DNA of 64,000 bases, taken from positions 124,001-188,000 of IMG/VR virus record IMGVR_UViG_3300050821_002957, one strand, 5' to 3'. The notes under the pieces are model-generated. The model was given only the letters and a program-made list of their open reading frames with translations, was not told the DNA's origin and made no database searches. Positions 2,514-60,276 of the stretch are shown here, one piece after another. Both the position numbers and the translations under genes were made by a program. Each line of letters begins with the position of its first letter. Within the stretch, counting starts at the first letter, position 1.

Positions 2514-2978
2514 TTAGTATCCATTTTTGGCAATAAAGTCCAATGTATCTTTGAGTGGCGTAACCAACAGAGGATGTCCAAGAGGCGTTTCGTAAAACCC
2601 TTTGCTGATTTCCATTCGCTTGATCGGATTGTGAAGGATCTTGAAATCGCCTTCGACTGGTTTCTTATTGACCGATTCAATTTTACCACAGACCAGACAC
2701 ATACGAGTTTCAGGATGCCAGTCGTCGTTGTCCCAGGAATACGAACCACCGTAGTAGGAGTGTAGAGTAACAACAACTTTGTGCGTACACTCAGCCTTAA
2801 GAGCTTCGATCTCGGCGTTCAATTCCCTAGTAAGTTTTTGCTTGAGAATTTCTTTGGTACGAATCTGCTTGGCGAGAGATTTGTAAGTCATTGACAACCA
2901 CCTGCATAAACCAGTAATACTGCTATGGTCAATGTTAACAAACCACCCACGCCGAAAGCTACTGGAATAGACCACCAA
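2514..2978 (-). CDS. hypothetical protein
   Basis: ORF in the co-directional gene run; real start probably at MTYKSL. Confidence 0.55.
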   Translation of the reverse strand: MVVYSSSFRRGWFVNIDHSSITGLCRWLSMTYKSLAKQIRTKEILKQKLTRELNAEIEALKAECTHKVVVTLHSYYGGSYSWDNDDWHPETRMCLVCGKIESVNKKPVEGDFKILHNPIKRMEISKGFYETPLGHPLLVTPLKDTLDFIAKNGY

Positions 2979-3025
2979 GGAACCGAATTCCTCTTCATGA
3001 ATTCTTCAATCATGAAATCATTCTA

Positions 3026-3565
3026 TCACGATTGTTTGACAGGCGCAATCAGAGCGACAGCGAGTTTGCCATCTTGACGTGGAATCGATTCAGGCTTTCC
3101 AAATGGCTCCAGGTCGGCAATGAGACGTTTGAGAAGATCGTATCCAATGTTGGTATGAGCGATCTCTCGGCCACGGAACTGAACGACGGCTCGGACTTTG
3201 TTGCCGTCTTTCAGGAATTCAATTGCATGTTTCTTTTTGAAATCGTAATCGTGATCGTCAGTGTTTGGCCGGAACTTCAGTTCTTTGATGACGGTGACGT
3301 GTTGGTGACGCTTTGCTTCTTGTTTTTTCTTTTTCTCTTCAAACAAATACTTACCGTGGTCCATAACTTTGGCGACGGGCGGCTTGGCAGTTGGAGAAAT
3401 GCAGATGAGATCAAGGTTGAGTGCTCTGGCTCGTTGGATTGCTTGATTGGTTGGAAGGATGACGTTGGAGCCATCTGGGAAGATTGTCCGAACTTCAGGA
3501 AACCGGATACCTTCGTTTACGTTATCTTTGATTTTTGGTCGTGGGGTTCTTGGTTGATATGCCAT
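3026..3565 (-). CDS. infC: translation initiation factor IF-3
   Basis: NEGIRFPEVR, KPPVAKVMDHGKYLFE, IKELKFRPNTDDHDYDFK and FRGRE motifs. Confidence 0.97.
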   Translation of the reverse strand: MAYQPRTPRPKIKDNVNEGIRFPEVRTIFPDGSNVILPTNQAIQRARALNLDLICISPTAKPPVAKVMDHGKYLFEEKKKKQEAKRHQHVTVIKELKFRPNTDDHDYDFKKKHAIEFLKDGNKVRAVVQFRGREIAHTNIGYDLLKRLIADLEPFGKPESIPRQDGKLAVALIAPVKQS

Positions 3566-3586
3566 TAAGTGTAATTATTTAGACCT

Positions 3587-3985
3587 TTACCACTTGATTA
3601 ATAAAGTCCATTCGGTGTAGGCAGCATGAGAGTAGTCACCTTCACCACAACTGGCGGCAGTGTCCTTATATTCTGGATAGTATTTGGAAATAAGGGCCAC
3701 ATGATACCCTTCGTTTTCTAGTAGTTGTCTAGCGGCAGTAGTGACAACCCGTCCATTATCATCTTTCCACCAATCAGGAGAGACTTCTAAAGATTGAAGA
3801 CCTTTGCTGGCAGCTTCTTCAATTTTCTTGTGAATCTTTTCGACCATCTCTTTTGGATACTTGTCTTTCAAGTCCAATTGAAATTTTTTGGTTTCTTCTT
3901 CCCGCCTGATCCGGTCGGCCTCACTCTTTTCCCAGGCGAGTTGATTGGCTTTTTTGGTTGCGGCGGCAGCTTCTTTTGCAGTCAT
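3587..3985 (-). CDS. hypothetical protein
   Basis: 132-aa ORF in the gene run. Confidence 0.55.
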   Translation of the reverse strand: MTAKEAAAATKKANQLAWEKSEADRIRREEETKKFQLDLKDKYPKEMVEKIHKKIEEAASKGLQSLEVSPDWWKDDNGRVVTTAARQLLENEGYHVALISKYYPEYKDTAASCGEGDYSHAAYTEWTLLIKW

Positions 3986-4042
3986 AGTTTATAACGTGGC
4001 CGGATGCTATTAGTCACCCGGCTACGCCCACAGCGATGGATA

Positions 4043-4549
4043 TTACTCCACCAAATCGAATGCCCAGTTTGCCGCTTGAATCGACGTATCGAGCAGACGA
4101 AGTTCTTGACTCAGGTCATCGACGAGCTTGGTAAAATAGGCCAAGCTGACACCAGGAGCCACGAGCATTTTCGGAGCGTTCTCACCGTACATGCGGCGAG
4201 ACTGATTACGCCCACGAATTTGCTCTTTGATATTTGCAAAATGTTGGATCTGCGATTTCAAGGCATCACGATGAGCAAGCGCCTGCATCATGGTTCGTTC
4301 GCCGACCATCGTAGAATTGTTGGAAGTGTTGATGGAAACCGTCAGTGCTTCCCAACGATGAAATGCACTATGAAGAGAGATTAACAGTGCAGCAGCGTCT
4401 TCTCTTTCATCGTCATCGGCTACAAGACCGGGTAGCCCGAGACCAATCGTTGGTTCTTCAACTAATGCTGCTTCTGAAAAACGACGGTTCAGGTCTGTAA
4501 TACGTGCGCCCAAGGCTTTCTTTTCGAGCAATGCTTCTGCAAGTTTCAT
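4043..4549 (-). CDS. DIP1984-family coiled-coil protein
   Basis: N-terminal MKLAEALL and C-terminal LRLLDTSIQAANW signature; SD aaagga upstream. Confidence 0.8.
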   Translation of the reverse strand: MKLAEALLEKKALGARITDLNRRFSEAALVEEPTIGLGLPGLVADDDEREDAAALLISLHSAFHRWEALTVSINTSNNSTMVGERTMMQALAHRDALKSQIQHFANIKEQIRGRNQSRRMYGENAPKMLVAPGVSLAYFTKLVDDLSQELRLLDTSIQAANWAFDLVE

Positions 4550-4558
4550 AATGTCCTT

Positions 4559-4771
4559 TTAATCTCGTCCCGATCCCCAAGTGTTGTTTGGCTCGTATGA
4601 GCATTGTTCGACCGTTGCCATTGCACGAACAAAAACGATGCCACCATGTTCTACCTCTGGAAGAGAGAAATCAATATCTTTGATGTCACACTTAAGATTT
4701 TTGCGGATTAGATATTGTTTAATTGCTAATTTGATCTCTGGCTCGTCAAGAGTTACTTGGTGTGTCAACAT
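4559..4771 (-). CDS. hypothetical protein
   Basis: 70-aa ORF. Confidence 0.5.
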   Translation of the reverse strand: MLTHQVTLDEPEIKLAIKQYLIRKNLKCDIKDIDFSLPEVEHGGIVFVRAMATVEQCSYEPNNTWGSGRD

Positions 4772-4803
4772 GCTTTGATGATACTGTATTTTTGTTGAGT
4801 TGT

Positions 4804-4831
4804 AAAGGGGTGCTGCGAAAACACCCCCTTT
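4804..4831. terminator. intrinsic terminator hairpin closing the ncRNA cluster
   Basis: aaaggggtg-ctgcgaaaa-cacccccttt inverted repeat flanked by A/T runs. Confidence 0.7.
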
Positions 4832-4832
4832 T

Positions 4833-5205
4833 GATGGCCGCAGGATTCTACTGTTTCCAATCCTGCCAAAGTCAACCGCTAAACTTTCCCGGTTGGTCAG
4901 CCTACGTCTCGTGCAGGCTACGCTATTCTTTCACAGTATGTCACGATACTTGCCGAACCAATTAAGGCCGGGGAACTGACTGTCAGCTACTCGATAAAGA
5001 ATAAATTTTAGTGGAAGCATCCGACCATCTTACGATGACTTTGCTGCCCCGTCCACAAGCGGGAACGTTTTAGCCTGTTTCGATTACTCTAACAGATTAC
5101 TCTTTCGAGAGACGTTCGTGACAGACTTTTTAACCCAGGTCTGCCAGCCGGATTCTCCTCAAATGGAGTTGTCGGCGAACCGATTCCATACACTCAGGAG
5201 TCGAG
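4833..5205 (-). ncRNA. candidate large structured ncRNA (~370 nt) of unknown family
   Basis: No credible ORF; many hairpins on the minus strand (ctctc-gaaa-gag, gtcatc-gtaa-gatggt, agcctgc..gtaggct, gcaggatt..aatcctgc, gcagac..gtctgt); ends at the terminator. Confidence 0.5.
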
Positions 5206-5210
5206 AAATT

Positions 5211-5360
5211 TTTGATCCGAACAAATGGGAGCAATGGATGTTGTTAGGTGCTCTACCATTGAGCTACGTCCTCCATAATAATTTTGGGAGGACGATGGGA
5301 CTCGAACCCATAACCACCCGCTTAATAGGCGATAACCCATCACGAACGGCTCGAATCAAA
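5211..5360 (-). ncRNA. Y RNA-like (YrlA-type) permuted tRNA mimic, copy 1
   Basis: Terminal stem GAGCCG/UUUGUUC and GUUAUC motif, then T arm (AUGGG UUCGAGU CCCAU), loop-closed acceptor stem (CGUCCUCC/GGAGGACG) and D arm (GCUC AAUGGUA GAGC). Confidence 0.85.
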
Positions 5361-5366
5361 CTTGAA

Positions 5367-5496
5367 TCGTGAACAAATAAGCGCCATCCGAGGTTTAGCA
5401 TCTTAACCATTAGACGATACTAGTTTTACCCAGCAGCGGGACTCGAACCCACATCGCTCGTTTTATAGACGATAACGGACAACAAACGGCTCACGA
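5367..5496 (-). ncRNA. Y RNA-like (YrlA-type) permuted tRNA mimic, copy 2
   Basis: Same GAGCCG...GUUAUC...UUUGUUC frame; T arm GUGGG UUCGAGU CCCGC precedes the closed acceptor stem and D arm GUCU AAUGGUUA AGAU. Confidence 0.8.
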
Positions 5497-5500
5497 AAAT

Positions 5501-5677
5501 TTTGGTGCGAACAAATGGCGACAGTAGGGAATGCTCACTCTTTTCAAGTTTTGCTGAACTTCGCCCAGGCCGAGACCTTTACGAGCGGTGAGGATTCGAC
5601 CCCACTCTTTCATTACCCTTGCGGATAATGACGTTCCAAACCAATAGATAACCTACCAATCAACGGCTCACACTAAA
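5501..5677 (-). ncRNA. Y RNA-like ncRNA, copy 3 (divergent, extra helices)
   Basis: GAGCCG/GUUAUC/UUUGUUC frame; T-like arm with GUCGAAU loop; extra GCAA-capped hairpin. Confidence 0.7.
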
Positions 5678-5682
5678 CTCTT

Positions 5683-5862
5683 CTACTTGTTTTTATAATC
5701 GGTCTCGTAGAACCCCGATCCTTTGAAGTGAATCGCAACAGGCGACATCAACTTCTCCAGCTTACCACCGCACTCATGTCTGTCAAGCGGTGCATCATCC
5801 ATTCGTTGTCGAACTTCAAATATTTCTCCGCACTTTTCACAAACGTATTCGTACAGTGCCAT
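5683..5862 (-). CDS. FmdB-family zinc-ribbon protein (59 aa, absent from the ORF track)
   Basis: Manual translation MALYEYVCEKCGEIFEVRQRMDDAPLDRHECGGKLEKLMSPVAIHFKGSGFYETDYKNK*. Confidence 0.9.
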   Translation of the reverse strand: MALYEYVCEKCGEIFEVRQRMDDAPLDRHECGGKLEKLMSPVAIHFKGSGFYETDYKNK

Positions 5863-5871
5863 TCAAATTTA

Positions 5872-6026
5872 TTGTCCGAACAAATGATCGCCTAAGGAAA
5901 TTTGTGACGGTCGCTCTACCAACTGAGCTACATCCAACGTTAACGTTCGCACGCCTAGATGGAAGACAGGACTCGAACCTGCGGCCTACTGTTTGGAATG
6001 ATAACCCTAAACTACGGCTCGAACAA
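5872..6026 (-). ncRNA. Y RNA-like (YrlA-type) permuted tRNA mimic, copy 4
   Basis: GAGCCG/GUUAUC/UUUGUUC frame; T arm GCAGG UUCGAGU CCUGU followed by D arm GCUC AGUUGGUA GAGC. Confidence 0.82.
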
Positions 6027-6033
6027 AACTCTA

Positions 6034-6121
6034 TCTCCCGAAAGGATCTTCCTTCACTTCTGGCTCCATATTACCGTTCGCACGACTTTTTAGCCATCGT
6101 TCTAGCTTAAACTACAGGAGA
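6034..6121 (-). pseudogene. degenerate tRNA-like element
   Basis: Acceptor-like UCUCCUG/CGGGAGA and D-like arm; 6-nt anticodon loop, no TTC T-loop, no CCA. Confidence 0.35.
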
Positions 6122-6126
6122 AAATC

Positions 6127-6203
6127 TGGTAGTCAGTCTCGGACTCGAACCGAGGGCCTTCTCCGTGTAAAGGAGTTGCTCTAACCAACTGAGCTAACCG
6201 ACT
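6127..6203 (-). tRNA. tRNA-Val(TAC)
   Basis: Cloverleaf, anticodon loop TTTACAC, CCA encoded. Confidence 0.95.
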
Positions 6204-6208
6204 AAAAT

Positions 6209-6285
6209 TGGTAGCGGATCTAGGAGTCGAACCTAGTATCTCAAGGTTATGAGTCTTGAATGGTTGTCCGTTCCACTCACCCGCA
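6209..6285 (-). tRNA. tRNA-Met(CAT), initiator-like (1:72 mismatch)
   Basis: Loop CTCATAA, CCA end, U1/U72 mismatch. Confidence 0.85.
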
Positions 6286-6402
6286 AATCGAAACCGGAGC
6301 ATACTGCGCTCTACGGTAAACTTGTATTCCTGCCTACGTCCTCTCGCCTTCAGTCATTATGGTACGAAACCCATGCATAGATTCCGCACTGAGGATCATC
6401 AG

Positions 6403-6801
6403 TCACCGTAAAGCTCGGTTCGCATCTACGAACAACTGCAACGCTACGGAATGCCGTTTTTCCGGCAGGAAATTCTCATATGTTTCTATCCTGTGGCAAT
6501 TGGCACACAGAACTTCACATTTTGCAATCTCAGCACGTACCCTAGCTTCGCTCCAACATTTACGAACCGCATCGGCCACGTTTGCTACTTTATCACGCAA
6601 ATGATGAAAATCAAGAACTCTAAAATCCTTGATCCCACATTCTACGCATCCACTCGCCTCTTTCAAAGTTCTAACCAACAACAGAAGACGCTCTTTCGTA
6701 GCACGATTATGAATCAATGCCCTAGCTTTTAACTTGGCTTTGTTATTCAAATAATGCCGATGAGCACTCTCTTTCTGTTTGATCTTACACTTATGAGGCA
6801 T
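6403..6801 (-). CDS. HNH homing endonuclease
   Basis: CVECG...LDFHH...CEVLCANCHRIET motif; start moved to the ATG just after the tRNA CCA. Confidence 0.88.
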   Translation of the reverse strand: MPHKCKIKQKESAHRHYLNNKAKLKARALIHNRATKERLLLLVRTLKEASGCVECGIKDFRVLDFHHLRDKVANVADAVRKCWSEARVRAEIAKCEVLCANCHRIETYENFLPEKRHSVALQLFVDANRALR

Positions 6802-6803
6802 TC

Positions 6804-6880
6804 TGGTTGCGGCAGATGGCTTCGATCCATCGACTTCTTGCTTATGAGGCAAGCGTTCTACCGGGCTGAACTATACCGCA
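6804..6880 (-). tRNA. tRNA with CAT anticodon (Met or Ile2)
   Basis: Cloverleaf with cttgc-CTCATAA-gcaag anticodon arm; CCA. Confidence 0.9.
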
Positions 6881-6889
6881 AAAACTTTC

Positions 6890-6971
6890 GCAATGAACAA
6901 ATTTTTCAATGTCGGGTTTTCCTGGCATCTTAAAAGAACGCTGATAACCAACATCTTCGGCTCATCACTGC
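6890..6971 (-). ncRNA. short Y RNA-like ncRNA lacking the tRNA module (YrlB-like), copy 5
   Basis: GAUGAGCCGAA...GUUAUC...UUUGUUCAUU; begins 5 nt after a TATAGATA late-type promoter. Confidence 0.7.
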
Positions 6972-7000
6972 TTTACTATCTATACACGCAAAAATTGTGT

Positions 7001-7135
7001 AGAGCGAACAAATATGTAGGTCTCCGCTTGTAACTACCGCCCGGACGCAATCAATATTACTACTGACTGCGGTATGGAATCGAACCACATCGCCTTTTTT
7101 GCAGAAAGAGAACAGAAACCCAGGCGGCTCACTCT
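7001..7135 (-). ncRNA. Y RNA-like ncRNA, copy 6
   Basis: GUGAGCCG/UUUGUUCGC stem; T arm UGUGG UUCGAUU CCAUA; closed acceptor-like stem; TTGACA/TATTCT and CTAAATA promoters directly upstream. Confidence 0.72.
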
Positions 7136-7175
7136 GACTTATTTAGAATACCACACCCAGTCACAGTGTCAAGTA

Positions 7176-7481
7176 TTATTTTCCGAGAAAGAACAAAGAC
7201 GAATAGATGCCGGTCACCGTACCAAGAACACCACCGGCAGTATAACCGATCCATTGAATAAAAGTGTCCTCATCTTTGCCTTTCATCATTTTCTTGATCA
7301 CAAAAAATGTCAATGAGGCCAGTGTTGTATCTGTGATGATAGCCGCCAGAACGTTAGCCTGTGCGACGGCTCTCCATGAGATTGTACAAAGACCCCAATT
7401 GAAAAACTGCATGGCTCCAATTTCAAGTGCATCAATGATCTGTTTCTTGTTGACTGCTGGAAATCGGAAAATTACTTTCAT
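7176..7481 (-). CDS. small membrane protein
   Basis: Three hydrophobic segments. Confidence 0.6.
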   Translation of the reverse strand: MKVIFRFPAVNKKQIIDALEIGAMQFFNWGLCTISWRAVAQANVLAAIITDTTLASLTFFVIKKMMKGKDEDTFIQWIGYTAGGVLGTVTGIYSSLFFLGK

Positions 7482-7494
7482 GCTTGGATTTAGA

Positions 7495-7968
7495 CTAAGC
7501 TAAAACTGCAACATGCTTACCCAGGCGTGCAGAAAAATAACTTACAGCTTCTTCATACGAAGAGAAAATGTTCGCAGTCGGAAACCTTTCACGAAGATCC
7601 TTTTCAGTCTTCTTCAGAGCTTTTAAGAGATGGCCGCTGTACTCTCTGTTGTCGAACACAATCACAGTAGTACTTGGCTTATCGTACAAGCCCATCACAG
7701 CCTCGACAATGCTGTAGACAGAAACATGTGTCGCATCGCCGGGGTTCGGAGAGCAGATGTAAAAGAGGTTATATTGCGCCTCACGTTTTGCCTGATCTTC
7801 TGCGACTTGACATTCCGGTGTCCAATCAGGAACTACAGGATTATAAAGGGATTCTGCCGGAACACCAGCAGCTACAAGATCATCAATGAAAGTGGACCGC
7901 CATGTGGTAGATCCGACAGTACCGCCAAGGAAAATGGATGTGTGTGACATGAATTTATCACACCACAT
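7495..7968 (-). CDS. nucleoside 2-deoxyribosyltransferase-like protein
   Basis: IFLGGT...WR, YNPVVPDW and SIVE motifs. Confidence 0.7.
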   Translation of the reverse strand: MWCDKFMSHTSIFLGGTVGSTTWRSTFIDDLVAAGVPAESLYNPVVPDWTPECQVAEDQAKREAQYNLFYICSPNPGDATHVSVYSIVEAVMGLYDKPSTTVIVFDNREYSGHLLKALKKTEKDLRERFPTANIFSSYEEAVSYFSARLGKHVAVLA

Positions 7969-7972
7969 ATTC

Positions 7973-8323
7973 CTATTCTGTCAACATTGAGGCGTAGATA
8001 AGAAGCTCTTCTTGAGATCTAAAGTAATGTTCGATTTTGCGAGAACATTCAAGATGACTCGGCATGAAACTACTGTACATGCATAAAGTACAGCCCATAT
8101 CATGCCGAGAGCGTAGAAACGTCGTCAGAGGCGCTGGAAGATCCTTTCGGTCCTCTAGGTCATACAAGTCCTGTTCAGCACGTCCTAACGTCTTCATGCG
8201 CTCGGCACACTCTTTCATCACACTATCTTTGAAATTCGATTCAGTAATCAGACGTGCATTCACACTGGCAGCTTTCTTTGCTACCATCCACGTCCGTAAT
8301 GTATCGAAAATCAGTTTATCCAT
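7973..8323 (-). CDS. hypothetical protein
   Basis: ORF coupled to the thioredoxin gene. Confidence 0.5.
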   Translation of the reverse strand: MDKLIFDTLRTWMVAKKAASVNARLITESNFKDSVMKECAERMKTLGRAEQDLYDLEDRKDLPAPLTTFLRSRHDMGCTLCMYSSFMPSHLECSRKIEHYFRSQEELLIYASMLTE

Positions 8324-8648
8324 TTATTGGGGTTGCCAAATACTTCAAAAGATCGGTCGGTGTTCTTGGACCGTCATATCGTGAAACTTCAACCCCGCCT
8401 TTGAACAGAGCCAAGGCGGGAATGGACCGGATTTTGAACTGCTCGGTCTGGATTGGATTTTCGTCAATGTTCAATTTACCAACTTTCACTGCACCGGCAA
8501 TATCGTTCGCTACGATTTCCAAAACTGGCGTCAGCTTCACACACGGACCACACCAGGGTGCCCAAAAATCCACCAGGACGGGTAACTCAGACTTCAGTAC
8601 TTCTTCCTCAAAATTTGCGTCAGTCAATTCTACAATGTTCTCGCTCAT
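8316..8648 (-). CDS. trxA: thioredoxin
   Basis: VLVDFWAPWCGPC active site. Confidence 0.97.
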   Translation of the reverse strand: MSENIVELTDANFEEEVLKSELPVLVDFWAPWCGPCVKLTPVLEIVANDIAGAVKVGKLNIDENPIQTEQFKIRSIPALALFKGGVEVSRYDGPRTPTDLLKYLATPING

Positions 8649-8930
8649 GCTTTCCTTCCCTTAATTGGTTCCTTCCGATGATTCTTGCAGTAATATTGCC
8701 CGTTTTCCATGTGCCGGGTTACTTTACCGCAGCCAATAACACACGGTCTTGCTTTGTTTCGTCCAGTCATTTGTCCTCTTGTTTAGTATAGCATTCCAGG
8801 CATCTTACCGTCGTCGTTCGATTGGTCAGGATGGTATGTCCACACTCGCCTCGCACCACGTTAGGATAACCATTTAGCGCCGGTCTGATCACTTCAGTAA
8901 TTTTCACCGAAGGCCAGTTCTTTAGAAACA

Positions 8931-9530
8931 TCATTCCCAATAGTTACGATACTCTGTGCCGTAAACTTCATTTAGCTTCTTGAAGTAGGCATCAGTTTTG
9001 ATCTTCACCTGGAAACCATCACCCTTTGCCACGACGCCTTCCCATACAGGATACACCCCTTTTCGCACATCGTCAATGAACTGCTTGTTGAGGTTGCCTT
9101 CGTAGACTACCTGTGCAGCTTGGGGCATGTCACCGAACGTCTTCAGGAATGTTCTAGGGGCCATGAAACCACGTTTGAACAAGAATGCATCGATCAGACG
9201 AAGTTCCATCAAATCGTTAGGATCATGTTGACCGGCAAAACTGTTGGGGCCGAAAAATTCTGTGAAAACTGTGATGCGTTGGATGCCTCGCTCCAAATGT
9301 TTCACCCGACGCACGATCTCATCGCCCAATGTGTCTTTGAAAATTGGAATTGCTTTGGCATACAACGGATCAGACTCATCGAACAACTGATGCTTGGTGC
9401 CGTACTTATGCCAGCCTTGTTTCGGCGACCATTCCCAACGCAAGTTGCTTCCATCGTACTTGTAAAAAGCAATGCAAGGCTTTCCCAATGGTGCCTTAGC
9501 GCTGCCGTCGATGGAAGGGAACTGTTGCAT
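8931..9530 (-). CDS. RNA ligase (Rnl2-like nucleotidyltransferase domain)
   Basis: Motif I KYDGSN, EFFG, EGVV and KIK. Confidence 0.8.
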   Translation of the reverse strand: MQQFPSIDGSAKAPLGKPCIAFYKYDGSNLRWEWSPKQGWHKYGTKHQLFDESDPLYAKAIPIFKDTLGDEIVRRVKHLERGIQRITVFTEFFGPNSFAGQHDPNDLMELRLIDAFLFKRGFMAPRTFLKTFGDMPQAAQVVYEGNLNKQFIDDVRKGVYPVWEGVVAKGDGFQVKIKTDAYFKKLNEVYGTEYRNYWE

Positions 9531-9713
9531 TATTTTAGTGACTTTAGATATTCCGAAATTCGTGCATCTCTTATGGCTTGATCCTGTTTGAATGCTTTCA
9601 TCTGAGCGTTGAACTTGCGTCGTTCTTCATTTGGCAAAAACCATCCAATTAACAGGCCGACGACAGCCGATCCTGCGAGAAACATCCAAATTTCAGAATT
9701 GGTCATTTATAAG

Positions 9714-9796
9714 TGAGCGGGTGCGGGAGTTGAACCCACATTTCCATCGGTGATCAAACCGGGCTAGGCGTCCTGTCCATTTAGACGAACCCTCTC
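9714..9796 (-). pseudogene. atypical tRNA (Gln/Glu-like D arm, expanded anticodon arm)
   Basis: D arm GUCU AAAUGGACA GGAC and T arm GUGGG UUCAACU CCCGC intact; anticodon region ~24 nt; no CCA. Confidence 0.55.
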
Positions 9797-9805
9797 ATAA
9801 CCTTT

Positions 9806-10189
9806 CTATCCCGTTGCCTTCATCATCAACGGGGCGGTGTCGATCTGCTTCGCACAGGCAGTCGTATAAAGCTGTCGAACGTTGGTCGCCGTAAATTCTT
9901 GATTGAACCGGGTCTTGAATCCATCATGATTTAGAATTCGTGCAATGGTATTGAACGACGAATTCACTTTACGGAGTGACATCATTCGCTCGGTCACTGC
10001 TTCCAAATTGTAATCAGGATTGGTCGGCTTCTTTCCGATGTTCACACCAGCTTCTTTTGAGACATGAGCACTCAATTCGAGAATCAAACCTTCGTGGTTC
10101 TTTTCCTCGAATGCAACGTCTTCTTTAAGATTGGCAATCCGATTTTTGGACTGCCGGATCTTATTCATGATTTCTTTGTACGATGGCAC
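9806..10189 (-). CDS. hypothetical protein with recombinase-type HTH
   Basis: SFNTIARILNHDGFKTR motif. Confidence 0.55.
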   Translation of the reverse strand: MPSYKEIMNKIRQSKNRIANLKEDVAFEEKNHEGLILELSAHVSKEAGVNIGKKPTNPDYNLEAVTERMMSLRKVNSSFNTIARILNHDGFKTRFNQEFTATNVRQLYTTACAKQIDTAPLMMKATG

Positions 10190-10207
10190 TGTTGTTGTCC
10201 TTTCTTT

Positions 10208-10504
10208 TCAGATCAAAAGTTTACAGACTCGGGCCTTGACGAAGCCGGTTGTAATCTCACGTCCGGTGTCGGCACAAATCCTGTTACGAATCAAAAAATC
10301 CAACATGGTTGCGTTTTCGCTCCAGGTCTTTATAATAACTTCATTAGCCTGAATGTCATGTTCGGGCAAGTTTACCGTGGCGCTGGCAACCTGCCCCTCC
10401 GCATCCATCAATACTAACGCCACTCGACCGTTGGCATATTTTTGTTTTTCCAACCACACGTTATAGACATCACTCGGCGTGGTGTACTTGTACATTTGCT
10501 TCAT
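10208..10504 (-). CDS. hypothetical protein (DUF4313-like)
   Basis: YANGRVAL...ATVNLP...IKTWSEN...TGFV pattern. Confidence 0.55.
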   Translation of the reverse strand: MKQMYKYTTPSDVYNVWLEKQKYANGRVALVLMDAEGQVASATVNLPEHDIQANEVIIKTWSENATMLDFLIRNRICADTGREITTGFVKARVCKLLI

Positions 10505-10550
10505 AACGGTAATCGTACCACATCTGAAACAGGATCAACAAACAAAATTT

Positions 10551-10625
10551 TGGGGTGCTATGAGAGGCTCGAACTCTCCCTAACAGGTTCACAGCCTGTT
10601 GTGCTACCGCTACACTAAAAGCACC
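10551..10625 (-). tRNA. tRNA-His(GTG)
   Basis: Loop CTGTGAA, G-1, C73, CCA. Confidence 0.93.
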
Positions 10626-10857
10626 ATAATGGTCAACGTCTGAACAATTTCTGACACTCAACATACCATCGATCAACGACTTTGTTGTTGGGCCAGCCTG
10701 CCGCCTCTAAAACAATTGCGGCTTTCATGTCATCAACGTCAACGAACTTTTCTTCAAGTGATAATCCAAGCTCGACCATTAACTTCTCGAGAACTTGAAC
10801 CTCTTGAACAATCTCACCTTCAAACTCACCGAACAGCATGAATTGTCTCATAAATTT

Positions 10858-10931
10858 TGGCTCCCGGTCAGAGACTCGAACTCCGATTAGAGGCTTCAGA
10901 GGCCCCTGTCCTGCCATTAGACGAACCGGGA
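10858..10931 (-). tRNA. tRNA-Gln(CTG)
   Basis: Loop CTCTGAA, CCA. Confidence 0.93.
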
Positions 10932-10935
10932 ATAA

Positions 10936-11496
10936 CTAAACTCGTTTCACATTGCGACCAGCAAACGTTTCTGTTTGACTGTTGCAATTCGGACATAACA
11001 GCCGAAGATTGTCCAGTCTGTTATCATCCTTCACCCCATTGATATGGTCAAGCACCATCACCAACATTTTTCCGTTCCATTCCGGCTGCTGGCCACAATC
11101 ACTACACTCATTCGCCAGTATACCATCTCGGATCAAACGATTTTTCAAGTGTCCTCGATTGTATGTCGATCCCTCTACCAAAACATTCAACAATGAAACT
11201 GATCGTTCCTCAATATTCGGTACGATTCGACCACACTCAACCGACTTATACCATGATGCCGGATTCATCCCAAATTTGTTAATACACTCCCGAAAAGAAG
11301 CTCCTCTATCAATCTCTTTTTGTACAGCAGTCCAATCATATCGCTGTGCGCCATCACGACCCATAAAGACTATGGACGGATTCTCAGCATGGCGGCGTGC
11401 ATGATAACTAATCGTAGATCGAGCACAACCCAATTCTTTTTCAATCTCTCGATACGAACGTCCTTCTTTCAACAACTGAATAATACGATGCTTCAT
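10936..11496 (-). CDS. HNH homing endonuclease with N-terminal HTH
   Basis: GRSYREIEKELG HTH; LDHINGVKDDNRLDNLRLLCPNCNSQT; CTAAATA-N5-ATG start. Confidence 0.92.
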   Translation of the reverse strand: MKHRIIQLLKEGRSYREIEKELGCARSTISYHARRHAENPSIVFMGRDGAQRYDWTAVQKEIDRGASFRECINKFGMNPASWYKSVECGRIVPNIEERSVSLLNVLVEGSTYNRGHLKNRLIRDGILANECSDCGQQPEWNGKMLVMVLDHINGVKDDNRLDNLRLLCPNCNSQTETFAGRNVKRV

Positions 11497-12214: not shown

Positions 12215-12817
12215 TCATACCGATAAGCCTCGAAACGTCAAACTCACACGAGGACCACAATTCTGAATCGAACTCTTCGGAATTCGATGAAAATGTGTAT
12301 CCTGCATCCCGGCTTCCATCAGACACAAACTACCAGAGTCAAGCCACAACTTCGTGACATTGGTAGTATCTGGTTTCACCGTAGTCAATGTCGTCTCTCC
12401 CATCGCCGTAGTCTTAATCGCTGGTGCAAAATAAATCTCTCGTCTCGCACCCAACGACACAATCGCAATAGGACGCTCGTCATCCATTTCAGGAGAGTCG
12501 TCGGCGTGCCAGCCTAACTGGTCGCTTCCATCACGATAGCCGTTGAGGAAACACACTTCAAAACGGCATCCTGCAATCTTCTCTGCACCCTCTCGAATCG
12601 CCGTAATGACCGGATGCCACGGCTGCGCCTCATAAGTCCGCACGCCAGCACCACGCCCATACGTATACGGCAGGCCCGAATCGTTGCAATAATACTCCGA
12701 CCGAGGCGTCTGATCACGTCGCACCCAGGCCAACTCTTTCCATAGAGTTTCAAACACAGTCGCCGAATCAGCAACGAATTCCTGCACGTATTTTATCGGT
12801 ACGCCGTTCATGATCAT
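12215..12817 (-). CDS. AlkB-family 2OG-Fe(II) dioxygenase
   Basis: NGYRDGSDQLGWHADD, IVSLGA, HRIPK and RVSLTFR motifs. Confidence 0.93.
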   Translation of the reverse strand: MIMNGVPIKYVQEFVADSATVFETLWKELAWVRRDQTPRSEYYCNDSGLPYTYGRGAGVRTYEAQPWHPVITAIREGAEKIAGCRFEVCFLNGYRDGSDQLGWHADDSPEMDDERPIAIVSLGARREIYFAPAIKTTAMGETTLTTVKPDTTNVTKLWLDSGSLCLMEAGMQDTHFHRIPKSSIQNCGPRVSLTFRGLSV

Positions 12818-13127: not shown

Positions 13128-14426
13128 CTACTGTGCCTGACCCTGATAGCTGGCCGCATCAATCGCAGCCGCCGCAATCTCTTCAGACGACTTTCTCAGT
13201 GTCTTCTTTACCTTCACCGGAGCCATATCTTCCGGCAATCGAAACGCAATGCCCTTGGCGATTTGCGGCAAACCATCGTGGCTGAAGCCCTGATACTTCA
13301 CCGTCAACTGCTGACCGAGATACTTATCGGCTTCCAAGAACAACTCAGCACGGTCGGCCAACGTTCCATTCGGCACAACAAAGAACACACCCGGAACATC
13401 ATCACGATAGGCCGTCTTCATCAAGTTGCCGGTTTTTTCTTTACCTTCCAGGCTGAACCCAGGAACCACACACTGCCAAATCACACAACCGGCATGACCA
13501 CCTTCGGCCTGCTTGAAACCAACAACCTCGAACTCGGCATCTTCAAAGAGCTTGATCTTCAACAAATTCTTCGAGCGCACACCGGACTCATACTTGCCAT
13601 GCTTATTCCGCAACATCGAACCTTCAAATTTACTCTCGATGCATTTCTCTTGAAAAGCCAGCACTTGCTCTTCGTTTTCCACTTCCAACGTCAAAACCTT
13701 CACCAGATGCGGCGTACCAGGATCAGCCGTCATCCAATCGCCCGGAACCAACGCAACCAAATCGGCGATGCGCTGTTCCTGAATGCGATCTTCTTCACCT
13801 TCGCACATTGGAACGTCATAAATGTGAAATTCCAATTTCTTCGACTCAGGATAATTGTTCGACAACCACTTCTGAATCGTCTGCCGCTTTACACCGTGAA
13901 AATACATCTCGCCGTCAAACATGGCGTCACGAGGCATCACCTTTTCCAACTGCGCCTTGATGTGCGGAGCCTGCCATTCCTTGCCGCCACGAGTCATTAA
14001 GACGATCCGGTCGCCGTCCCAATACGCTAGACACCGGGCACCATCCAACTTCGGCTGCACGAACGCCGGATACTTCGCATAACGATTCGTGCTCTTTGCT
14101 GGCCCACGTTCTTTATCAATGAACTTTTCGTTCGGAGCCAACATCACTTCGATCTTCCGGGTCACGCCGACGTTTTCGACGCCGACCACGTACTTGTGCT
14201 CAACCTTGTGCTTCCATTCGGCGACGGCTTCATTTTCAGCCTGAATTTCCGGGGTAGTTGCATTCGCTTTTCCCACGTTCTTGGCTTCACATGCCCGTCG
14301 ATGGGTGATCAGCTTGCCACCGACCTGTCCAGCTTCGATTACAATCTCATTGCCTTCGGTCCAAATTCGCCACTGAAGCAAAGCTCCAGTCGAACTCTTT
14401 CGATAAAGTGTTGGTAAAGTGTCCAT
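13128..14426 (-). CDS. ATP-dependent DNA ligase
   Basis: QPKLDGARC, FDGEMY, EGSMLR, LLKIK and LTVKYQ motifs; start at MDTLPTL after a TATAAT promoter. Confidence 0.93.
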   Translation of the reverse strand: MDTLPTLYRKSSTGALLQWRIWTEGNEIVIEAGQVGGKLITHRRACEAKNVGKANATTPEIQAENEAVAEWKHKVEHKYVVGVENVGVTRKIEVMLAPNEKFIDKERGPAKSTNRYAKYPAFVQPKLDGARCLAYWDGDRIVLMTRGGKEWQAPHIKAQLEKVMPRDAMFDGEMYFHGVKRQTIQKWLSNNYPESKKLEFHIYDVPMCEGEEDRIQEQRIADLVALVPGDWMTADPGTPHLVKVLTLEVENEEQVLAFQEKCIESKFEGSMLRNKHGKYESGVRSKNLLKIKLFEDAEFEVVGFKQAEGGHAGCVIWQCVVPGFSLEGKEKTGNLMKTAYRDDVPGVFFVVPNGTLADRAELFLEADKYLGQQLTVKYQGFSHDGLPQIAKGIAFRLPEDMAPVKVKKTLRKSSEEIAAAAIDAASYQGQAQ

Positions 14427-14516
14427 GCTGAAAATTATACCACACGCAGACAAAAAGATGCAACTACTTGCGAACGTTTATTTTAGGGGAACCGAGAATC
14501 AGGACGATTTCGGCGG

Positions 14517-14600: not shown

Positions 14601-15525
14601 GTTTTTATTTATACAGACAAACAAATTTGGTGGAAGGTCTCTCAGCCATATGGGTGGTATACGTGCCTTCCACCATCCATATCGCACCCTGGTCGTCAAA
14701 GAACCTTCCAGGATCACAGGGTTAATTAGTGTTCCAAAAAGCCTTACAGCCAACCCTGTATCTTTTATACCACTTCTTTTTCAGGATGTCAAGCACCAAC
14801 CAAAAAAGATTTTATATCTGGGTTTTGGATTGTTTAGCGGCTTGATGCTGCCATCTGTGTTGATCTTGATTATGCGTTCGGTGTCTGCCATTATGTTCCT
14901 TTTTTGACGCATCCACATTTTCTCCAATGTAGATGTCCATTACCATGTAGACACTTCACGCAACCGCACGAAGGACGCTGCCAAAGCTCATTGCCATGAA
15001 TGCATTTTACAGGCATCGGCGTCGGAAGTGCCTTGAAATGAAAAAATTTTCTGAAACGATCACGCATCGCCACAGTTCGAGGATCACCCAGGTCAATTTT
15101 ATTCAGATAATCAGCCATCAAAAGTGCAAAGGGCATTATTCCTCCGCTTGTGGACCCAGAAGAGCTTCGATCACAGCCGGATCATTGGTTGTGCTGATAA
15201 TCATATCGGGAATCTGACAACCACTTCCATCGTCATCTCGTGCATCAGGTTTGAAAACGAGAACAGCAGTGAGTCCATTTTGACCTGCTTCTTTGATCAG
15301 ATCGAGATATTCTTGATATGAGGTCATCCATGATCGTAATTATACAACAGGGATGAAAATAAATCCAGGCTCTTGATTAGTTATTTGTTGGTAGACGATC
15401 AGTGCTTCGTTTGGTGTCAAGGAGTCATCAACGTAAACGATAGGGCAAATTTCTTTGGCTTTCACAACATCATCAGAATGACAGATGATGTATTTAACGA
15501 GTGAAGGTGAGGCATTCATAAATTG

Positions 15526-15599
15526 TGGAGCCGGGGCCGAGAATCGAACTCGGGGCTGATCATTACAAGTGAACTGCTTTACCACTAAGCGAACCCGGC
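15526..15599 (-). tRNA. tRNA-Thr(TGT)
   Basis: Loop CTTGTAA, CCA. Confidence 0.93.
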
Positions 15600-15822
15600 G
15601 TATTAGTCCTCAAATTCTACCGTACCATCATCGACATCACTGACAGCCATCGTAACCTGAACGAGCCGATCATTTTCATACCAACGAAGCGTAACAAGAG
15701 AACCTTGAATGGTTACGCCTACGCCGGTCGAAACGAGCTTCTTCCGCATCGCTTCAATAATATCATTAGCGACTGGCTCAACGAATTTTGTTTTTCCTAC
15801 CCACATAAAGCACTTCAAAAAT

Positions 15823-59214: not shown

Positions 59215-59490
59215 TCGTAGCAGATAGTCGAAGTGAACGAAGAACGCTTCTTGGACATGGGTTCAATTCCCATCGGCTCCACCAAAATTCTGATTTTAGG
59301 CATCAGAGAACTTATGGGGCCGCCCCGGTTTCGACAGGATGAGATGTTGCGTAAGCAGGGCTACCGTGGTCCTTGTCCACGTTATCCAGAAGGAATCATA
59401 AACGCTAATGCACCTGCATTTGCTTTCGCTGCCGCTGCCTAAACAGCGCTCGAACGAAGTCGGAGAACTTTGTTAAAGAACTCCCAACAG
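59215..59490 (+). ncRNA. ssrA: two-piece (circularly permuted) tmRNA, tag ANAPAFAFAAAA
   Basis: T arm and CGGCUCCACCA (ends 59284) precede GGGGCCG...GGUUUCGAC (starts 59316); G3.U70 pair; tag ORF 59404-59442; TTGACA/TATAAA promoter upstream. Confidence 0.92.
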
Positions 59491-60123: not shown

Positions 60124-60199
60124 GCCGAATTAGCTCAGTTAGCAGAGCGCCGCCCTCGTAATGCGGAGGTCATGAGTGCAACTCTCATATTCGGCTCCA
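60124..60199 (+). tRNA. tRNA-Thr(CGT)
   Basis: Loop CTCGTAA, CCA; atypical T loop TGCAACT. Confidence 0.9.
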
Positions 60200-60202
60200 A
60201 AT

Positions 60203-60276
60203 GCCGCCTTATTTCAATGGTAGACTCTATCTCTGGTACAGATAGGATTTGGGTTCGATTCCCAAAGGCGGCTCCA
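60203..60276 (+). tRNA. tRNA-Thr(GGT)
   Basis: tatct-CTGGTAC-agata anticodon arm, CCA. Confidence 0.9.

What the first reader, a model, noticed from the sequence alone, without database searches (positions are those of the whole stretch)
5211..7135. Array of six Y-RNA-like ncRNAs with circularly permuted tRNA modules
Seen: six divergent units share a terminal stem 5'-GAGCCG/UUUGUUC-3' with a bulged C (five also carry GUUAUC). Three show a clear T arm, loop-closed acceptor stem, D arm order, two are more divergent, and one (6890-6971) lacks the tRNA module. Known: this is the architecture of bacterial YrlA/YrlB Y RNAs, which bind Ro60/Rsr and usually occur as 1-2 copies beside the Ro gene. Six diverged copies inside a phage tRNA cluster with no Ro gene in the window is unusual. 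They could partner a phage Ro elsewhere, redirect host Ro/PNPase, or act as decoys.
Basis: partly seen in the sequence, partly recalled or inferred. Interest (0 to 1): 0.85.

Follow-up and report, generated by a model that had tools for sequence, protein, structure and literature searches.

The report
Phage Y RNA array, Ro60 partner elsewhere
Six small RNA genes in the tRNA cluster of a 405-kb soil phage are Y RNAs of the known bacterial/phage YrlA type, and the phage carries the gene for their partner protein Ro60 about 165 kb away, so this is a real but known kind of RNA in an unusual arrangement.

Summary
Six units lie on the minus strand (7132-7004, 6965-6893, 6022-5876, 5671-5507, 5494-5369, 5354-5217). 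Each is closed by GAGC[C]G / UUUGUUC with a bulged C. U1-U5 carry GUUAUC and U6 carries GUUCUC. U1, U2 and U4 have a full T arm, loop-closed 7-bp acceptor stem and D arm. U3 and U6 are degenerate, and U5 has no tRNA module.

A covariance model built from such units finds exactly these six in the window. The two units left out of the model still score E 5e-7 and 4e-5. The structure is supported by covariation: 91% of cells paired against about 40% in slid controls.

The window is part of a 405,631-bp viral contig that encodes a 621-aa Ro60 (TROVE plus Ro60-vWA) about 165 kb away, with four more units beside it. In 79 Ro60-anchored viral loci the model gives 66 hits, all on the Ro60 strand.

Two soil metatranscriptomes hold exact contigs over U1-U5 and the tRNAs but not over the flanking genes or U6.

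Verdict: YrlA/YrlB-class Y RNAs. This is a new member of a known kind. What is unusual is the distant array and at least 11 copies per genome. Rfam's YrlA model misses them (40 bits against a cut-off of 69).

The parts
7004..7132 (-). U6: divergent Y RNA unit. It has the lower stem, GUUCUC in place of GUUAUC, a V hairpin (CUUU-CUGCAAA-AAAG), a T arm and a long closed stem. The D arm is lost.
   Evidence: R1 scores 56.9 bits, but U6 was in the training set. No RNA contig covers it. A single-sequence fold offers a competing pairing of GCCGCCUGG with CCGGGCGGU.
6893..6965 (-). U5: short Y RNA (YrlB/sbRNA-like). It has the lower stem with bulged C, a 7-bp upper stem, GUUAUC and a loop of about 30 nt. 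There is no tRNA module. It is the only unit with the strict GNCGAAG motif (GCCGAAG).
   Evidence: R1 scores 27.4 bits, E 4e-5 over the whole window, and U5 was not in the training set. RNA contigs 6774-6993 and 6785-6997 cover it.
5876..6022 (-). U4: complete YrlA-type unit without a V hairpin. It has a T arm, a closed acceptor stem with a large loop, a D arm and a G15:C48 pair.
   Evidence: R1 94.5 bits. Rfam YrlA 27.7 bits. An RNA contig 5873-6247 starts within 3 nt of its 3' end. Its closest relative is L015:8591-8716, at 74%.
5507..5671 (-). U3: divergent unit. It has the lower and upper stems, GUUAUC, an enlarged V region, a T-like arm with a 6-nt loop, an acceptor-like stem and a D-like arm without GG.
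   Evidence: R1 35.1 bits, E 5e-7, and U3 was not in the training set. RNA contigs end at 5658 and 5662 in two runs.
5369..5494 (-). U2: complete YrlA-type unit. It has a V hairpin (UCGU-CUAUAAA-ACGA), a T arm, a 6-bp closed acceptor stem, a variant D arm and an A15:U48 pair.
   Evidence: R1 91.5 bits. Covered by RNA contigs 5234-5658 and 5397-5662.
5217..5354 (-). U1: complete YrlA-type unit. It has a V hairpin (CGC-CUAUUAA-GCG), a T arm, a 7-8 bp closed acceptor stem, a canonical D arm and an A15:U48 pair.
   Evidence: R1 122.2 bits. Rfam YrlA 40 bits, E 1e-6 in the local search. Covered by RNA contigs.
6804..6880 (-). tRNA-Met (CAU), lying between the HNH-like ORF and U5.
   Evidence: ARAGORN and Rfam, 62.1 bits.
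6127..6285 (-). tRNA-Val (UAC) at 6127-6203 and a second tRNA (CAU) at 6212-6285, upstream of U4.
   Evidence: ARAGORN and Rfam, 65 bits, for Val. Rfam only, 39.6 bits, for the second.
7145..7172 (-). Sigma-70-like promoter match (TTGACA, 16 nt, TG-TATTCT) just upstream of U6.
   Evidence: This is consensus only. The number of such sites in the region is no higher than in shuffles, and RNA contigs do not cover U6.

Best explanation
The six units are genes for Y RNAs of the YrlA (long, tRNA-like) and YrlB (short) class.

Transcription and processing (inferred). They are transcribed on the minus strand together with the tRNAs around them. They are then probably cut out of multi-gene precursors, because U1, U2 and U3 are only 12-14 nt apart.

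Fold (supported by covariation). Each RNA has four parts:
- a lower stem, RYGAGC[C]G paired with UUGUUCRY, with a bulged C;
- an internal loop;
- a 7-bp upper stem ending in GG;
- the linker UUAU.
In the long forms a circularly permuted tRNA body follows: V hairpin, variable loop, T arm, acceptor stem closed by a loop, nt 8-9 and D arm. A 2-bp helix joins the nucleotides after the D arm to those before the variable loop.

Function (inferred by analogy). The bulged-C stem is the docking site for the phage's own Ro60, encoded about 165 kb away. The tRNA-like body is the effector end. It would tether Ro60 to a tRNA-binding enzyme or an exoribonuclease, as with PNPase in Deinococcus, in Salmonella and with Thermus phage phiLo. 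Infected cells would thereby gain a phage-controlled machine for degrading structured RNA or for RNA surveillance. The paralogues are old and diverged, which suggests different partners or targets. Binding to Ro60 and the identity of the effector are inferred, not shown.
For: 1. Family membership by model. R1, built from 15 long units, finds exactly the six units in 64 kb. U3 and U5 were left out of the training set and still score E 5e-7 and 4e-5.

2. Covariation on 24 sequences. 91% of cells pair, against 35-44% when partners are slid. 30 of 36 pairs show double changes. The score is 0.705 against 0.217 in shuffles.

3. tRNA hallmarks. U8, A14, G18G19 and the UUCGAnU T loop are present. The nt15:nt48 pair is G:C in 16 sequences and A:U in 6. 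Chen et al. 2014 list this covariation as a YrlA feature.

4. Link to Ro60, tested two ways.
- A 14-base motif search of viral contigs pulled in 10 Ro60-encoding loci out of 120.
- R1 on 79 loci fetched by Ro60 alone gave 66 hits, all on the Ro60 strand and nearly all within about 1 kb of the gene.

5. The same contig has a 621-aa Ro60: TROVE E 2.9e-40, vWA_Ro60 E 2.2e-57, and E 4.7e-105 to D. radiodurans Rsr (2nvo). Four further units lie downstream of it.

6. The same model aligns actinophage-type units (L067, L034). Their V region matches the sequence targeted by the published M. smegmatis YrlA 5' probe, an RNA shown to co-precipitate with Rsr.

7. Expression. Two soil metatranscriptome runs hold exact contigs only over 5022-6997 (U1-U5 and the tRNAs). 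They hold nothing over the flanking genes at 3000-4969 and 7137-8900, which a DNA run does cover.

8. Long maintenance. Each unit is nearer to a unit of another phage contig (53-74%) than to its neighbours in the array (45-61%).
Against: - Rfam's curated YrlA model stays below its cut-off on every unit (best 40 bits against 69). It reports nothing for U2, U3, U5 or U6.
- The strict published Rsr motif GNCGAAN0-1G is present only in U5. The other five have GCCG followed by UU, UA or CC.
- The array is about 165 kb from Ro60, whereas known Y RNAs lie within a few kb of it.
- U6 has lost its D arm, can fold another way, and is not covered by RNA contigs.
- The RNA evidence comes from assembled contigs, which carry no strand and no true ends.
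- Single-sequence folding energies are unremarkable (z from -0.3 to -2.4).
- No moderately diverged relative with a syntenic array was found. Conservation of these particular copies therefore could not be tested; L126 and L127 gave no hits.
Confidence: 0.8

Rival explanations
1. The units are tRNA decoys or sponges that work without Ro60. They would soak up host tRNA-directed defence nucleases or tRNA-modifying enzymes, or hijack host PNPase or host Ro60, and so protect the phage's and the host's tRNA pool.
For: - They sit inside a large phage tRNA cluster and far from the phage Ro60 gene.
- V hairpins have 7-nt loops shaped like anticodon loops, C-U-NNN-A-A.
- The window also carries RNA-ligase-family genes, which fits a theme of RNA damage and repair.
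- A Ro60-like protein of phage Bas63 was reported to counter a defence system (PMC11482910).
Against: - The most conserved part is not the tRNA body alone. The bulged-C stem is invariant at G3, C6, C7 and G8 and is shared with units that sit directly beside Ro60 genes.
- U5 has no tRNA module at all yet keeps the stem.
- The acceptor end is closed, and the V stem is only 3-4 bp.
Confidence: 0.1
2. The units are decaying leftovers of tandem tRNA genes (dimeric-tRNA relics or tRNA pseudogenes) with no function of their own. They appear in RNA libraries only because they ride on tRNA precursors.
For: - Tandem tRNAs do score as false positives with YrlA-type models; 6145-6313 scores 30.5 bits.
- U3 and U6 are degenerate.
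- U6 shows no RNA coverage.
Against: - ARAGORN and the Rfam tRNA model do not call them tRNAs.
- Non-tRNA parts (the two stems and UUAU) are conserved, with compensatory changes, across unrelated phage contigs.
- The paralogues have been kept apart for as long as the phages themselves have diverged.
- No unit is a recent copy of any tRNA of this genome; best local scores are 15-19 over 44 nt.
Confidence: 0.04
3. The units are processing or punctuation elements of the tRNA operon. They would be tRNA-like handles that guide RNase P, RNase Z or RNase E in cutting the polycistronic precursor, and would not be stable trans-acting RNAs.
For: - The units are interleaved with tRNAs and separated by 12-14 nt.
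- 7-bp acceptor stems could attract RNase P, as shown for M. smegmatis YrlA.
- RNA contigs bridge neighbouring units.
Against: - The same RNAs occur beside Ro60 genes with no tRNA next to them in many loci.
- RNA contig depth over the units equals or exceeds that over the tRNAs, which suggests stable products.
- This reading does not explain the conserved bulged-C helix.
Confidence: 0.05

Closest known systems
YrlA (Rfam RF02553; Chen et al. 2014, PMC4201824; structure in bioRxiv 10.1101/312249), known from S. Typhimurium, M. smegmatis, mycobacteriophages and about 250 bacteria
   Same: The module order is the same: Ro60 site near the 5' end, conserved YUAY, optional V hairpin, T arm, loop-closed acceptor stem, D arm. 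The tRNA tertiary nucleotides and the covarying 15:48 pair are also shared. The association with Ro60 genes holds, and one model aligns actinophage YrlA-type units and the window units together.
   Different: - Both strands of the Ro60-site helix are conserved here (GAGC[C]G / UUGYUC). Chen et al. say only the 5' strand is recognisable in the Salmonella and M. smegmatis RNAs.
- Five of the six units lack the AA of GNCGAA.
- All score below the Rfam cut-off.
- The array is about 165 kb from Ro60, inside a tRNA cluster.
- The genome holds at least 11 units.
YrlB / Yrn2-type short bacterial Y RNAs
   Same: U5, and the short units beside this phage's Ro60, keep the Ro60-site stem and a second stem but have no tRNA module. 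This matches the second Y RNA found in each bacterium studied.
   Different: [quoted passage not shown] The phage short forms carry GGUUAUC and a loop of 20-30 nt.
Thermus phage phiLo Yrl1/Yrl2 with phage Ro60 (PMC12135203)
   Same: A phage-encoded Ro60 has its own Y RNA-like partners. There, binding was shown and a complex with host PNPase was assembled in vitro. It is the nearest experimental precedent for the mechanism proposed here.
   Different: phiLo has two RNAs directly upstream of Ro60, identified by a CGAA motif, and no tRNA-like module is described. Here there are many copies, most of them tRNA-like, and most lie far from Ro60.
Metazoan Y RNAs and nematode sbRNAs (Rfam RF00019, RF01656)
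   Same: Both have a lower stem in which a C-G pair, a bulged C and a G-U pair are conserved on both strands, then an internal loop, an upper stem and a U-U-A-U-C-like motif. The metazoan sequences are recalled from memory, so this is a lead only. One sibling unit beside the phage Ro60 scores 34.6 bits on the sbRNA model, whose cut-off is 38.
   Different: No window unit, and no other short unit tested, hits RF00019 or RF01656. These RNAs are not Pol III transcripts. The long forms carry a tRNA module that animal Y RNAs lack.
D. radiodurans Yrn1
   Same: It retains both strands of the Ro60-binding helix, has tRNA-like features, and tethers Rsr to PNPase.
   Different: Its T and D arms are in the opposite orientation relative to the 5' end. 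It was judged an independent lineage.

Membership tests
YrlA-type Y RNA (Chen et al. 2014; Rfam RF02553) | Permuted tRNA module: T arm, then loop-closed acceptor-like stem, then D arm | tested here: met
   U1, U2 and U4 have it in full. U3 and U6 have degenerate versions, and U5 lacks it. On 24 sequences the helices are 93-100% paired, with double changes in 15 of 16 pairs.
YrlA-type Y RNA (Chen et al. 2014; Rfam RF02553) | tRNA tertiary-interaction nucleotides, with compensatory G15:C48 / A15:U48 | tested here: met
   The pair is G:C in 16 sequences and A:U in 6, with 2 exceptions. U1 and U2 have A:U, U4 has G:C, and U6 fails. U8, A14, GG and the UUCGAnU loop are present.
YrlA-type Y RNA (Chen et al. 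2014; Rfam RF02553) | 5' motif GNCGAAN0-1G (proposed Rsr contact) | tested here: inconclusive
   The strict motif occurs only in U5 (GCCGAAG). All six keep G-N-C-C-G with the bulged C. Relatives beside Ro60 genes show both GCCGAA and GCCGNN forms.
YrlA-type Y RNA (Chen et al. 2014; Rfam RF02553) | Conserved YUAY ahead of the V region | tested here: met
   UUAU is present in U1 to U5, and U6 has UUCU. GUUAU is nearly invariant in the family alignment.
YrlA-type Y RNA (Chen et al. 2014; Rfam RF02553) | Score at or above Rfam's gathering cut-off (69 bits) | tested here: not met
   U1 scores 40 bits and U4 27.7. The others are not reported. Relatives beside Ro60 genes also stay at 22-48 bits, so the model is too narrow for this phage branch.
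YrlA-type Y RNA (Chen et al. 2014; Rfam RF02553) | Encoded next to a Ro60 gene (within 4 kb in the defining survey) | tested here: not met
   The array lies at contig positions of about 129.2-131.1 kb, and Ro60 at about 296.4-298.2 kb. The genome does have Ro60, with four sibling units within 3 kb of it.
YrlA-type Y RNA (Chen et al. 2014; Rfam RF02553) | Bound by Ro60/Rsr in vivo or in vitro | not testable with these tools
   Only genomic association could be tested: 66 of 66 model hits lie on the Ro60 strand in Ro60-anchored loci.
Metazoan Y RNA / nematode sbRNA | Terminal helix with a bulged C, conserved on both strands | tested here: met
   C6-G and G3-C are invariant, C7 is always unpaired, and G8 pairs with U (20 sequences) or C (3). 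The flanking pairs covary.
Metazoan Y RNA / nematode sbRNA | Match to the curated models RF00019 or RF01656 | tested here: not met
   No window unit hits at E up to 10. One sibling, L121:12329-12397, reaches 34.6 bits against a cut-off of 38 on RF01656. No other short unit hits.
Canonical tRNA | Cloverleaf with free acceptor ends, recognised by tRNA finders | tested here: not met
   ARAGORN and Rfam tRNA call the neighbouring tRNAs but none of the six units.

The most novel reading that the evidence does not exclude
The phage keeps a battery of at least 11 long-diverged Y RNAs. Seven are in a tRNA cluster (six in the window and one just outside it) and four are beside Ro60. They would serve as interchangeable adaptors that point one Ro60 ring at different partners or RNA targets during infection.

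A second point concerns origins. This phage branch keeps the animal-type two-stranded bulged-C helix and the UUAUC motif together with the bacterial tRNA module. It could therefore be the link showing that animal Y RNAs/sbRNAs and bacterial YrlA share one ancestor derived from tandem tRNA transcripts.
Probability: 0.2. Interest if true: 0.75.

Novelty: new member of a known kind. Interest (0 to 1): 0.42.

Why it matters
1. Annotation gap. The curated YrlA model misses this whole phage branch, so such genes go unannotated or look like tRNA debris. The model built here recovered 66 units beside Ro60 genes in viral contigs.

2. Search strategy. Earlier surveys reported Y RNAs only within 4 kb of Ro60. 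This genome shows that most of a phage's Y RNAs can sit elsewhere, inside tRNA clusters, so Y RNA repertoires of huge phages are probably undercounted.

3. Biology of the copies. Many old, diverged copies paired with one Ro60 gene suggest a multi-adaptor use of Ro60 in infection. That bears on recent reports that phage Ro60 engages host PNPase (phiLo) or counters a defence system (Bas63).

4. Origin. Y RNAs interleaved with tRNA genes, with V hairpins that look like anticodon arms, fit the proposal that YrlA arose from dimeric tRNA transcripts.

Tried and rejected
- Rfam at gathering thresholds gave no Y-type hit in the window. At E up to 10 it gave only sub-threshold YrlA on U1 and U4, and no RF00019 or sbRNA hit.
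- blastn of the array against 50,697 phage records matched only the embedded tRNAs.
- Single-sequence folding was not informative, with z from -0.3 to -2.4. Only comparative analysis was.
- A possible seventh unit at 6021-6066 (GAGCCAG...UUUUGUUC) is not supported. It has no UUAUC, no R1 hit, and a fold z of +0.9.
- I tested whether the units are recent copies of this phage's own tRNAs. They share no more than the generic T and D arms.
- Relatives found through the neighbouring IF-3 gene gave little. L125 is identical to the window, while L126 and L127 (41-47% IF-3) have no R1 hits. So there is no syntenic array at a useful distance.
- The closest cultured Ro60 is in Sinorhizobium phage Phosso (43%). 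There is no R1 hit within 20 kb of that gene. The rest of its 469 kb was not scanned.
- The non-coding stretch 5022-5216, which RNA contigs also cover, showed no family and no fold signal.
- The promoter scan gave a good-looking site before U6, but the site count is no higher than in shuffles and U6 is not in the RNA contigs.
Full report
**1. What is in the sequence**

The finding lies on the minus strand. Read 5' to 3' on that strand, there are six units:
- U6, 7132-7004
- U5, 6965-6893
- U4, 6022-5876
- U3, 5671-5507
- U2, 5494-5369
- U1, 5354-5217

Each begins (R)YGAGCCG and ends UUUGUUC(R)Y. U1 to U5 carry GUUAUC 8-10 nt after GAGCCG, and U6 carries GUUCUC.

Between the units lie several other features:
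- tRNA-Met at 6804-6880
- an HNH-like ORF at 6403-6852
- a tRNA(CAU) at 6212-6285, seen only by Rfam
- tRNA-Val at 6127-6203
- a 59-aa zinc-ribbon ORF at 5683-5862

Everything points the same way.

**2. Is it more than chance?**

Rfam at its curated cut-offs reports nothing here except tRNAs. At a permissive threshold the YrlA model matches U1 (40 bits, cut-off 69) and the tRNA-like core of U4 (27.7 bits), and nothing else.

I therefore looked for relatives. A search of viral contigs for UGAGCCG-N8-10-GGUUAUC returned 120 loci. Most were chance matches, but about twenty held clear units of the same design, often several per locus.

I aligned 15 long units, including U1, U2, U4 and U6, and wrote out the structure. 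The covariance model R1 built from this alignment finds exactly the six units in the 64-kb window when run with filters off. U3 and U5 were not used to build it and score 35.1 bits (E 5e-7) and 27.4 bits (E 4e-5). The only other hits are tandem tRNA pairs, a known false positive for this kind of model.

On 24 aligned sequences:
- 91% of cells form standard pairs, against 35-44% when partners are slid by 1-3 columns.
- 30 of 36 pairs have changes on both sides.
- The covariation score is 0.705, against 0.217 in shuffles.

The alignment was fitted to the model, which favours the structure. The margin is nevertheless large, and every helix takes part.

**3. Anatomy**

The lower stem pairs RYGAGC-G with UUGYUCRY. 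G3-C and C6-G never vary. The C after C6 is always unpaired, and the next pair is G-U (20 sequences) or G-C (3). The two outermost pairs covary freely.

Going inward, the parts are:
- an internal loop;
- a 7-bp upper stem, in which all seven pairs covary, ending in GG;
- the linker UUAU;
- in most long forms, a 3-4 bp V hairpin with a 7-nt loop of the form C-U-NNN-A-A;
- two nucleotides that pair with the two nucleotides following the D arm;
- a 4-5 nt variable loop;
- a T arm with a UUCGAnU loop;
- an acceptor stem of about 7 bp closed by a loop;
- U8 and N9;
- a D arm with A14 and GG.

The nt15:nt48 Levitt pair is G:C in 16 sequences and A:U in 6. U1 and U2 have A:U, and U4 has G:C. U4 lacks the V hairpin. 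U3 and U6 have degenerate T and D arms. U5 has only the two stems, GUUAUC and a loop of about 30 nt.

This is the architecture published for YrlA: a Ro60 motif, a conserved YUAY, and V, T, AS and D elements with a compensating 15:48 pair. The short second Y RNA (YrlB) is described there too.

**4. Link to Ro60**

The window has no Ro60. The window is positions 124,001-188,000 of IMGVR_UViG_3300050821_002957, a contig of 405,631 bp. L037 equals window 2953-11418 exactly.

A second motif hit on the same contig led to a 621-aa ORF, L121:9239-11104, at contig positions of about 296.4-298.2 kb. It has TROVE (E 2.9e-40) and Ro60-vWA (E 2.2e-57) domains, and its best solved relative is D. radiodurans Rsr (E 4.7e-105).

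Downstream of this gene on the same strand lie:
- tRNA-Ile and two tRNA-Ala;
- units at L121:12025-12224, 12333-12394, 12634-12714 and 13806-13876;
- a T/acceptor/D element with no recognisable Y stem.

One more long unit lies about 3.3 kb beyond the window's left edge, at L124:16840-16993 (52.6 bits). The genome therefore holds at least 11 units.

The association with Ro60 holds in both directions:
- Ten of the 120 motif-fetched loci encode Ro60.
- In 79 viral loci fetched only by Ro60 similarity, R1 gives 66 hits in 38 loci. All are on the Ro60 strand and almost all are directly upstream or downstream of the gene, with up to five per locus.

The same model also aligns high-GC actinophage-type units (L067, L034). 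Their V region matches the target of the published M. smegmatis YrlA 5' probe, an RNA shown to co-precipitate with Rsr.

**5. Expression**

Four public soil runs hold this DNA. When they are laid on window 3000-8900, the two metatranscriptome runs hold error-free contigs only between 5022 and 6997. These cover U1-U3, U4, the tRNAs, part of the HNH-like ORF, tRNA-Met and U5.

The RNA runs hold nothing over the protein genes on either side (3000-4969 and 7137-8900), over the zinc-ribbon ORF, or over U6. A DNA run from another sample covers the flanks as well.

Several contig ends coincide with unit ends:
- 5873 against the U4 3' end at 5876;
- 5658 and 5662, in two runs, against the U3 5' end at 5671.

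This argues for abundant stable RNAs rather than carried-over DNA. However, contigs have no strand and no true ends, so discrete transcripts are not yet shown.

**6. How it most likely works**

Shown: a conserved, covarying, Ro60-associated RNA fold with a tRNA-like body; a Ro60 gene in the same genome; and presence in RNA libraries.

Inferred from the established Ro60/Y RNA systems (X. laevis, D. radiodurans, S. Typhimurium and Thermus phage phiLo):
- The bulged-C stem docks on Ro60.
- The tRNA-like end recruits a tRNA-binding enzyme or exoribonuclease such as PNPase.
- The phage thereby gains a machine for degrading structured RNA or for RNA surveillance.

Each window unit is closer to a unit of another phage contig than to its neighbours. 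U4 is 74% identical to L015b, U1 65% to L122, U2 60% to L120b and U6 53% to L099, whereas siblings in the array are 45-61% identical. The paralogues are therefore old and separately maintained, which fits different partners or targets.

The rivals fit the data less well, for one main reason. The most conserved element is the Ro60-type stem, and U5 keeps that stem without any tRNA body. The rivals are Ro60-independent tRNA decoys, tRNA debris and processing handles.

**7. Comparison with what is known, and novelty**

Phage Ro60 genes with YrlA-like RNAs are known. Chen et al. reported 22 phages. TROVE proteins have been noted in some jumbo phages. phiLo Ro60 has been shown with Yrl1 and Yrl2 and host PNPase. 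Bas63 gp130 lies next to tRNA-like genes. So this is a new member of a known kind.

The differences are of arrangement and detail:
- Most copies lie about 165 kb from Ro60, inside a tRNA cluster. The defining survey reported only RNAs within 4 kb of Ro60.
- The genome has at least 11 copies.
- Both strands of the Ro60-site helix are conserved, as in animals and Deinococcus. In Salmonella and M. smegmatis only the 5' strand is recognisable.
- The curated Rfam model does not reach its cut-off on any member of this phage branch.

The resemblance to animal Y RNAs and sbRNAs rests on the bulged-C helix, on UUAUC, and on one sibling unit at 34.6 bits on the sbRNA model (cut-off 38). It is a lead, not a membership. 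No window unit and no other short unit matches those models.

**8. Verdict**

I put confidence at about 0.8 that these are Ro60-partnered Y RNAs. The effector and the biological role remain inferred. Interest is moderate. The result is useful for annotation and for the biology of Ro60 in huge phages, but it does not change the concept.

Noticed in passing
window 59223-59442 (+): A circularly permuted (two-piece) tmRNA: Rfam RF04321 at 93.5 bits, with the ARAGORN tag peptide ANAPAFAFAAAA. It is followed by two tRNA-Thr at 60124-60276. From my own knowledge, two-piece tmRNAs are typical of alphaproteobacteria and a few other groups, which hints at the host.
   Followed up: no
window 3026-3565 (-): A phage-encoded translation initiation factor IF-3 homologue, 179 aa. 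tblastn hits in phage records are annotated IF-3 at 40-45% identity.
   Followed up: partly
L124:16840-16993 (same contig, about 3.3 kb left of the window start): A seventh long Y unit of the same tRNA cluster, scoring 52.6 bits with R1. It lies between tRNA-Leu and tRNA-Ser.
   Followed up: partly
L121:11965-12015: About five tandem copies of a 10-nt repeat (CTGTTTCGTT-like) lie directly upstream of the 200-nt GGUUACC-type unit beside Ro60. They might be a regulatory site.
   Followed up: no
L121:12533-12614: A T arm / closed stem / D arm element lies between two Y units beside Ro60. It matches only model positions 43-100, has no recognisable bulged-C stem, and is not called as a tRNA.
   Followed up: partly
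window 5022-5216 (-): RNA-library contigs also cover this non-coding stretch downstream of U1. It has no Rfam family and no fold signal (z -0.44).
   Followed up: partly
window 6212-6285 (-): A tRNA with a CAU anticodon is found by Rfam only (39.6 bits) and missed by ARAGORN. It lies directly upstream of tRNA-Val.
   Followed up: no
window 6403-6852 (-): An ORF with CxxC...HH...CxxC (HNH-like by eye) sits between the tRNAs and tRNA-Met/U5. Its 5' part as listed overlaps tRNA-Met. It has no Pfam hit. It could be a homing endonuclease inserted in the RNA gene cluster.
   Followed up: partly
V hairpins of U1, U2, U6 and relatives (for example window 5320-5334): The V hairpin loops are 7 nt long and read C-U-NNN-A-A, like anticodon loops. 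The triplets include AUU, AUA, GCA, GUC, UUU, UCU and GUU. With the 2-bp helix next to it, the stem adds up to about 5 bp. This fits an origin from the anticodon arm of the first tRNA of a tRNA dimer.
   Followed up: partly
window 8931-9530 (-), 13128-14453 (-), 29516-30943 (+); L121:6677-7276 and 14839-15774: Nucleic-acid repair and turnover genes occur in the genome. The window has an RNA-ligase-family protein (PF09414) and an ATP-dependent DNA ligase. ClpP and an ADP-ribosylglycohydrolase flank the Ro60 locus. The ORF at 8931-9530 looked ligase-like to me by eye but has no Pfam hit.
   Followed up: no
L078:7761-8098 (-): A sub-threshold manA RNA match (34.3 bits, cut-off 55.2) lies right next to Y units and Ro60 in a 293-kb viral contig.
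   Followed up: no
L125 (IMGVR_UViG_3300021181_000010): A contig from a different metagenome carries the same array with identical model scores. A second DNA run from another study holds 72% of the sampled words. The phage therefore recurs across soil samples.
   Followed up: partly
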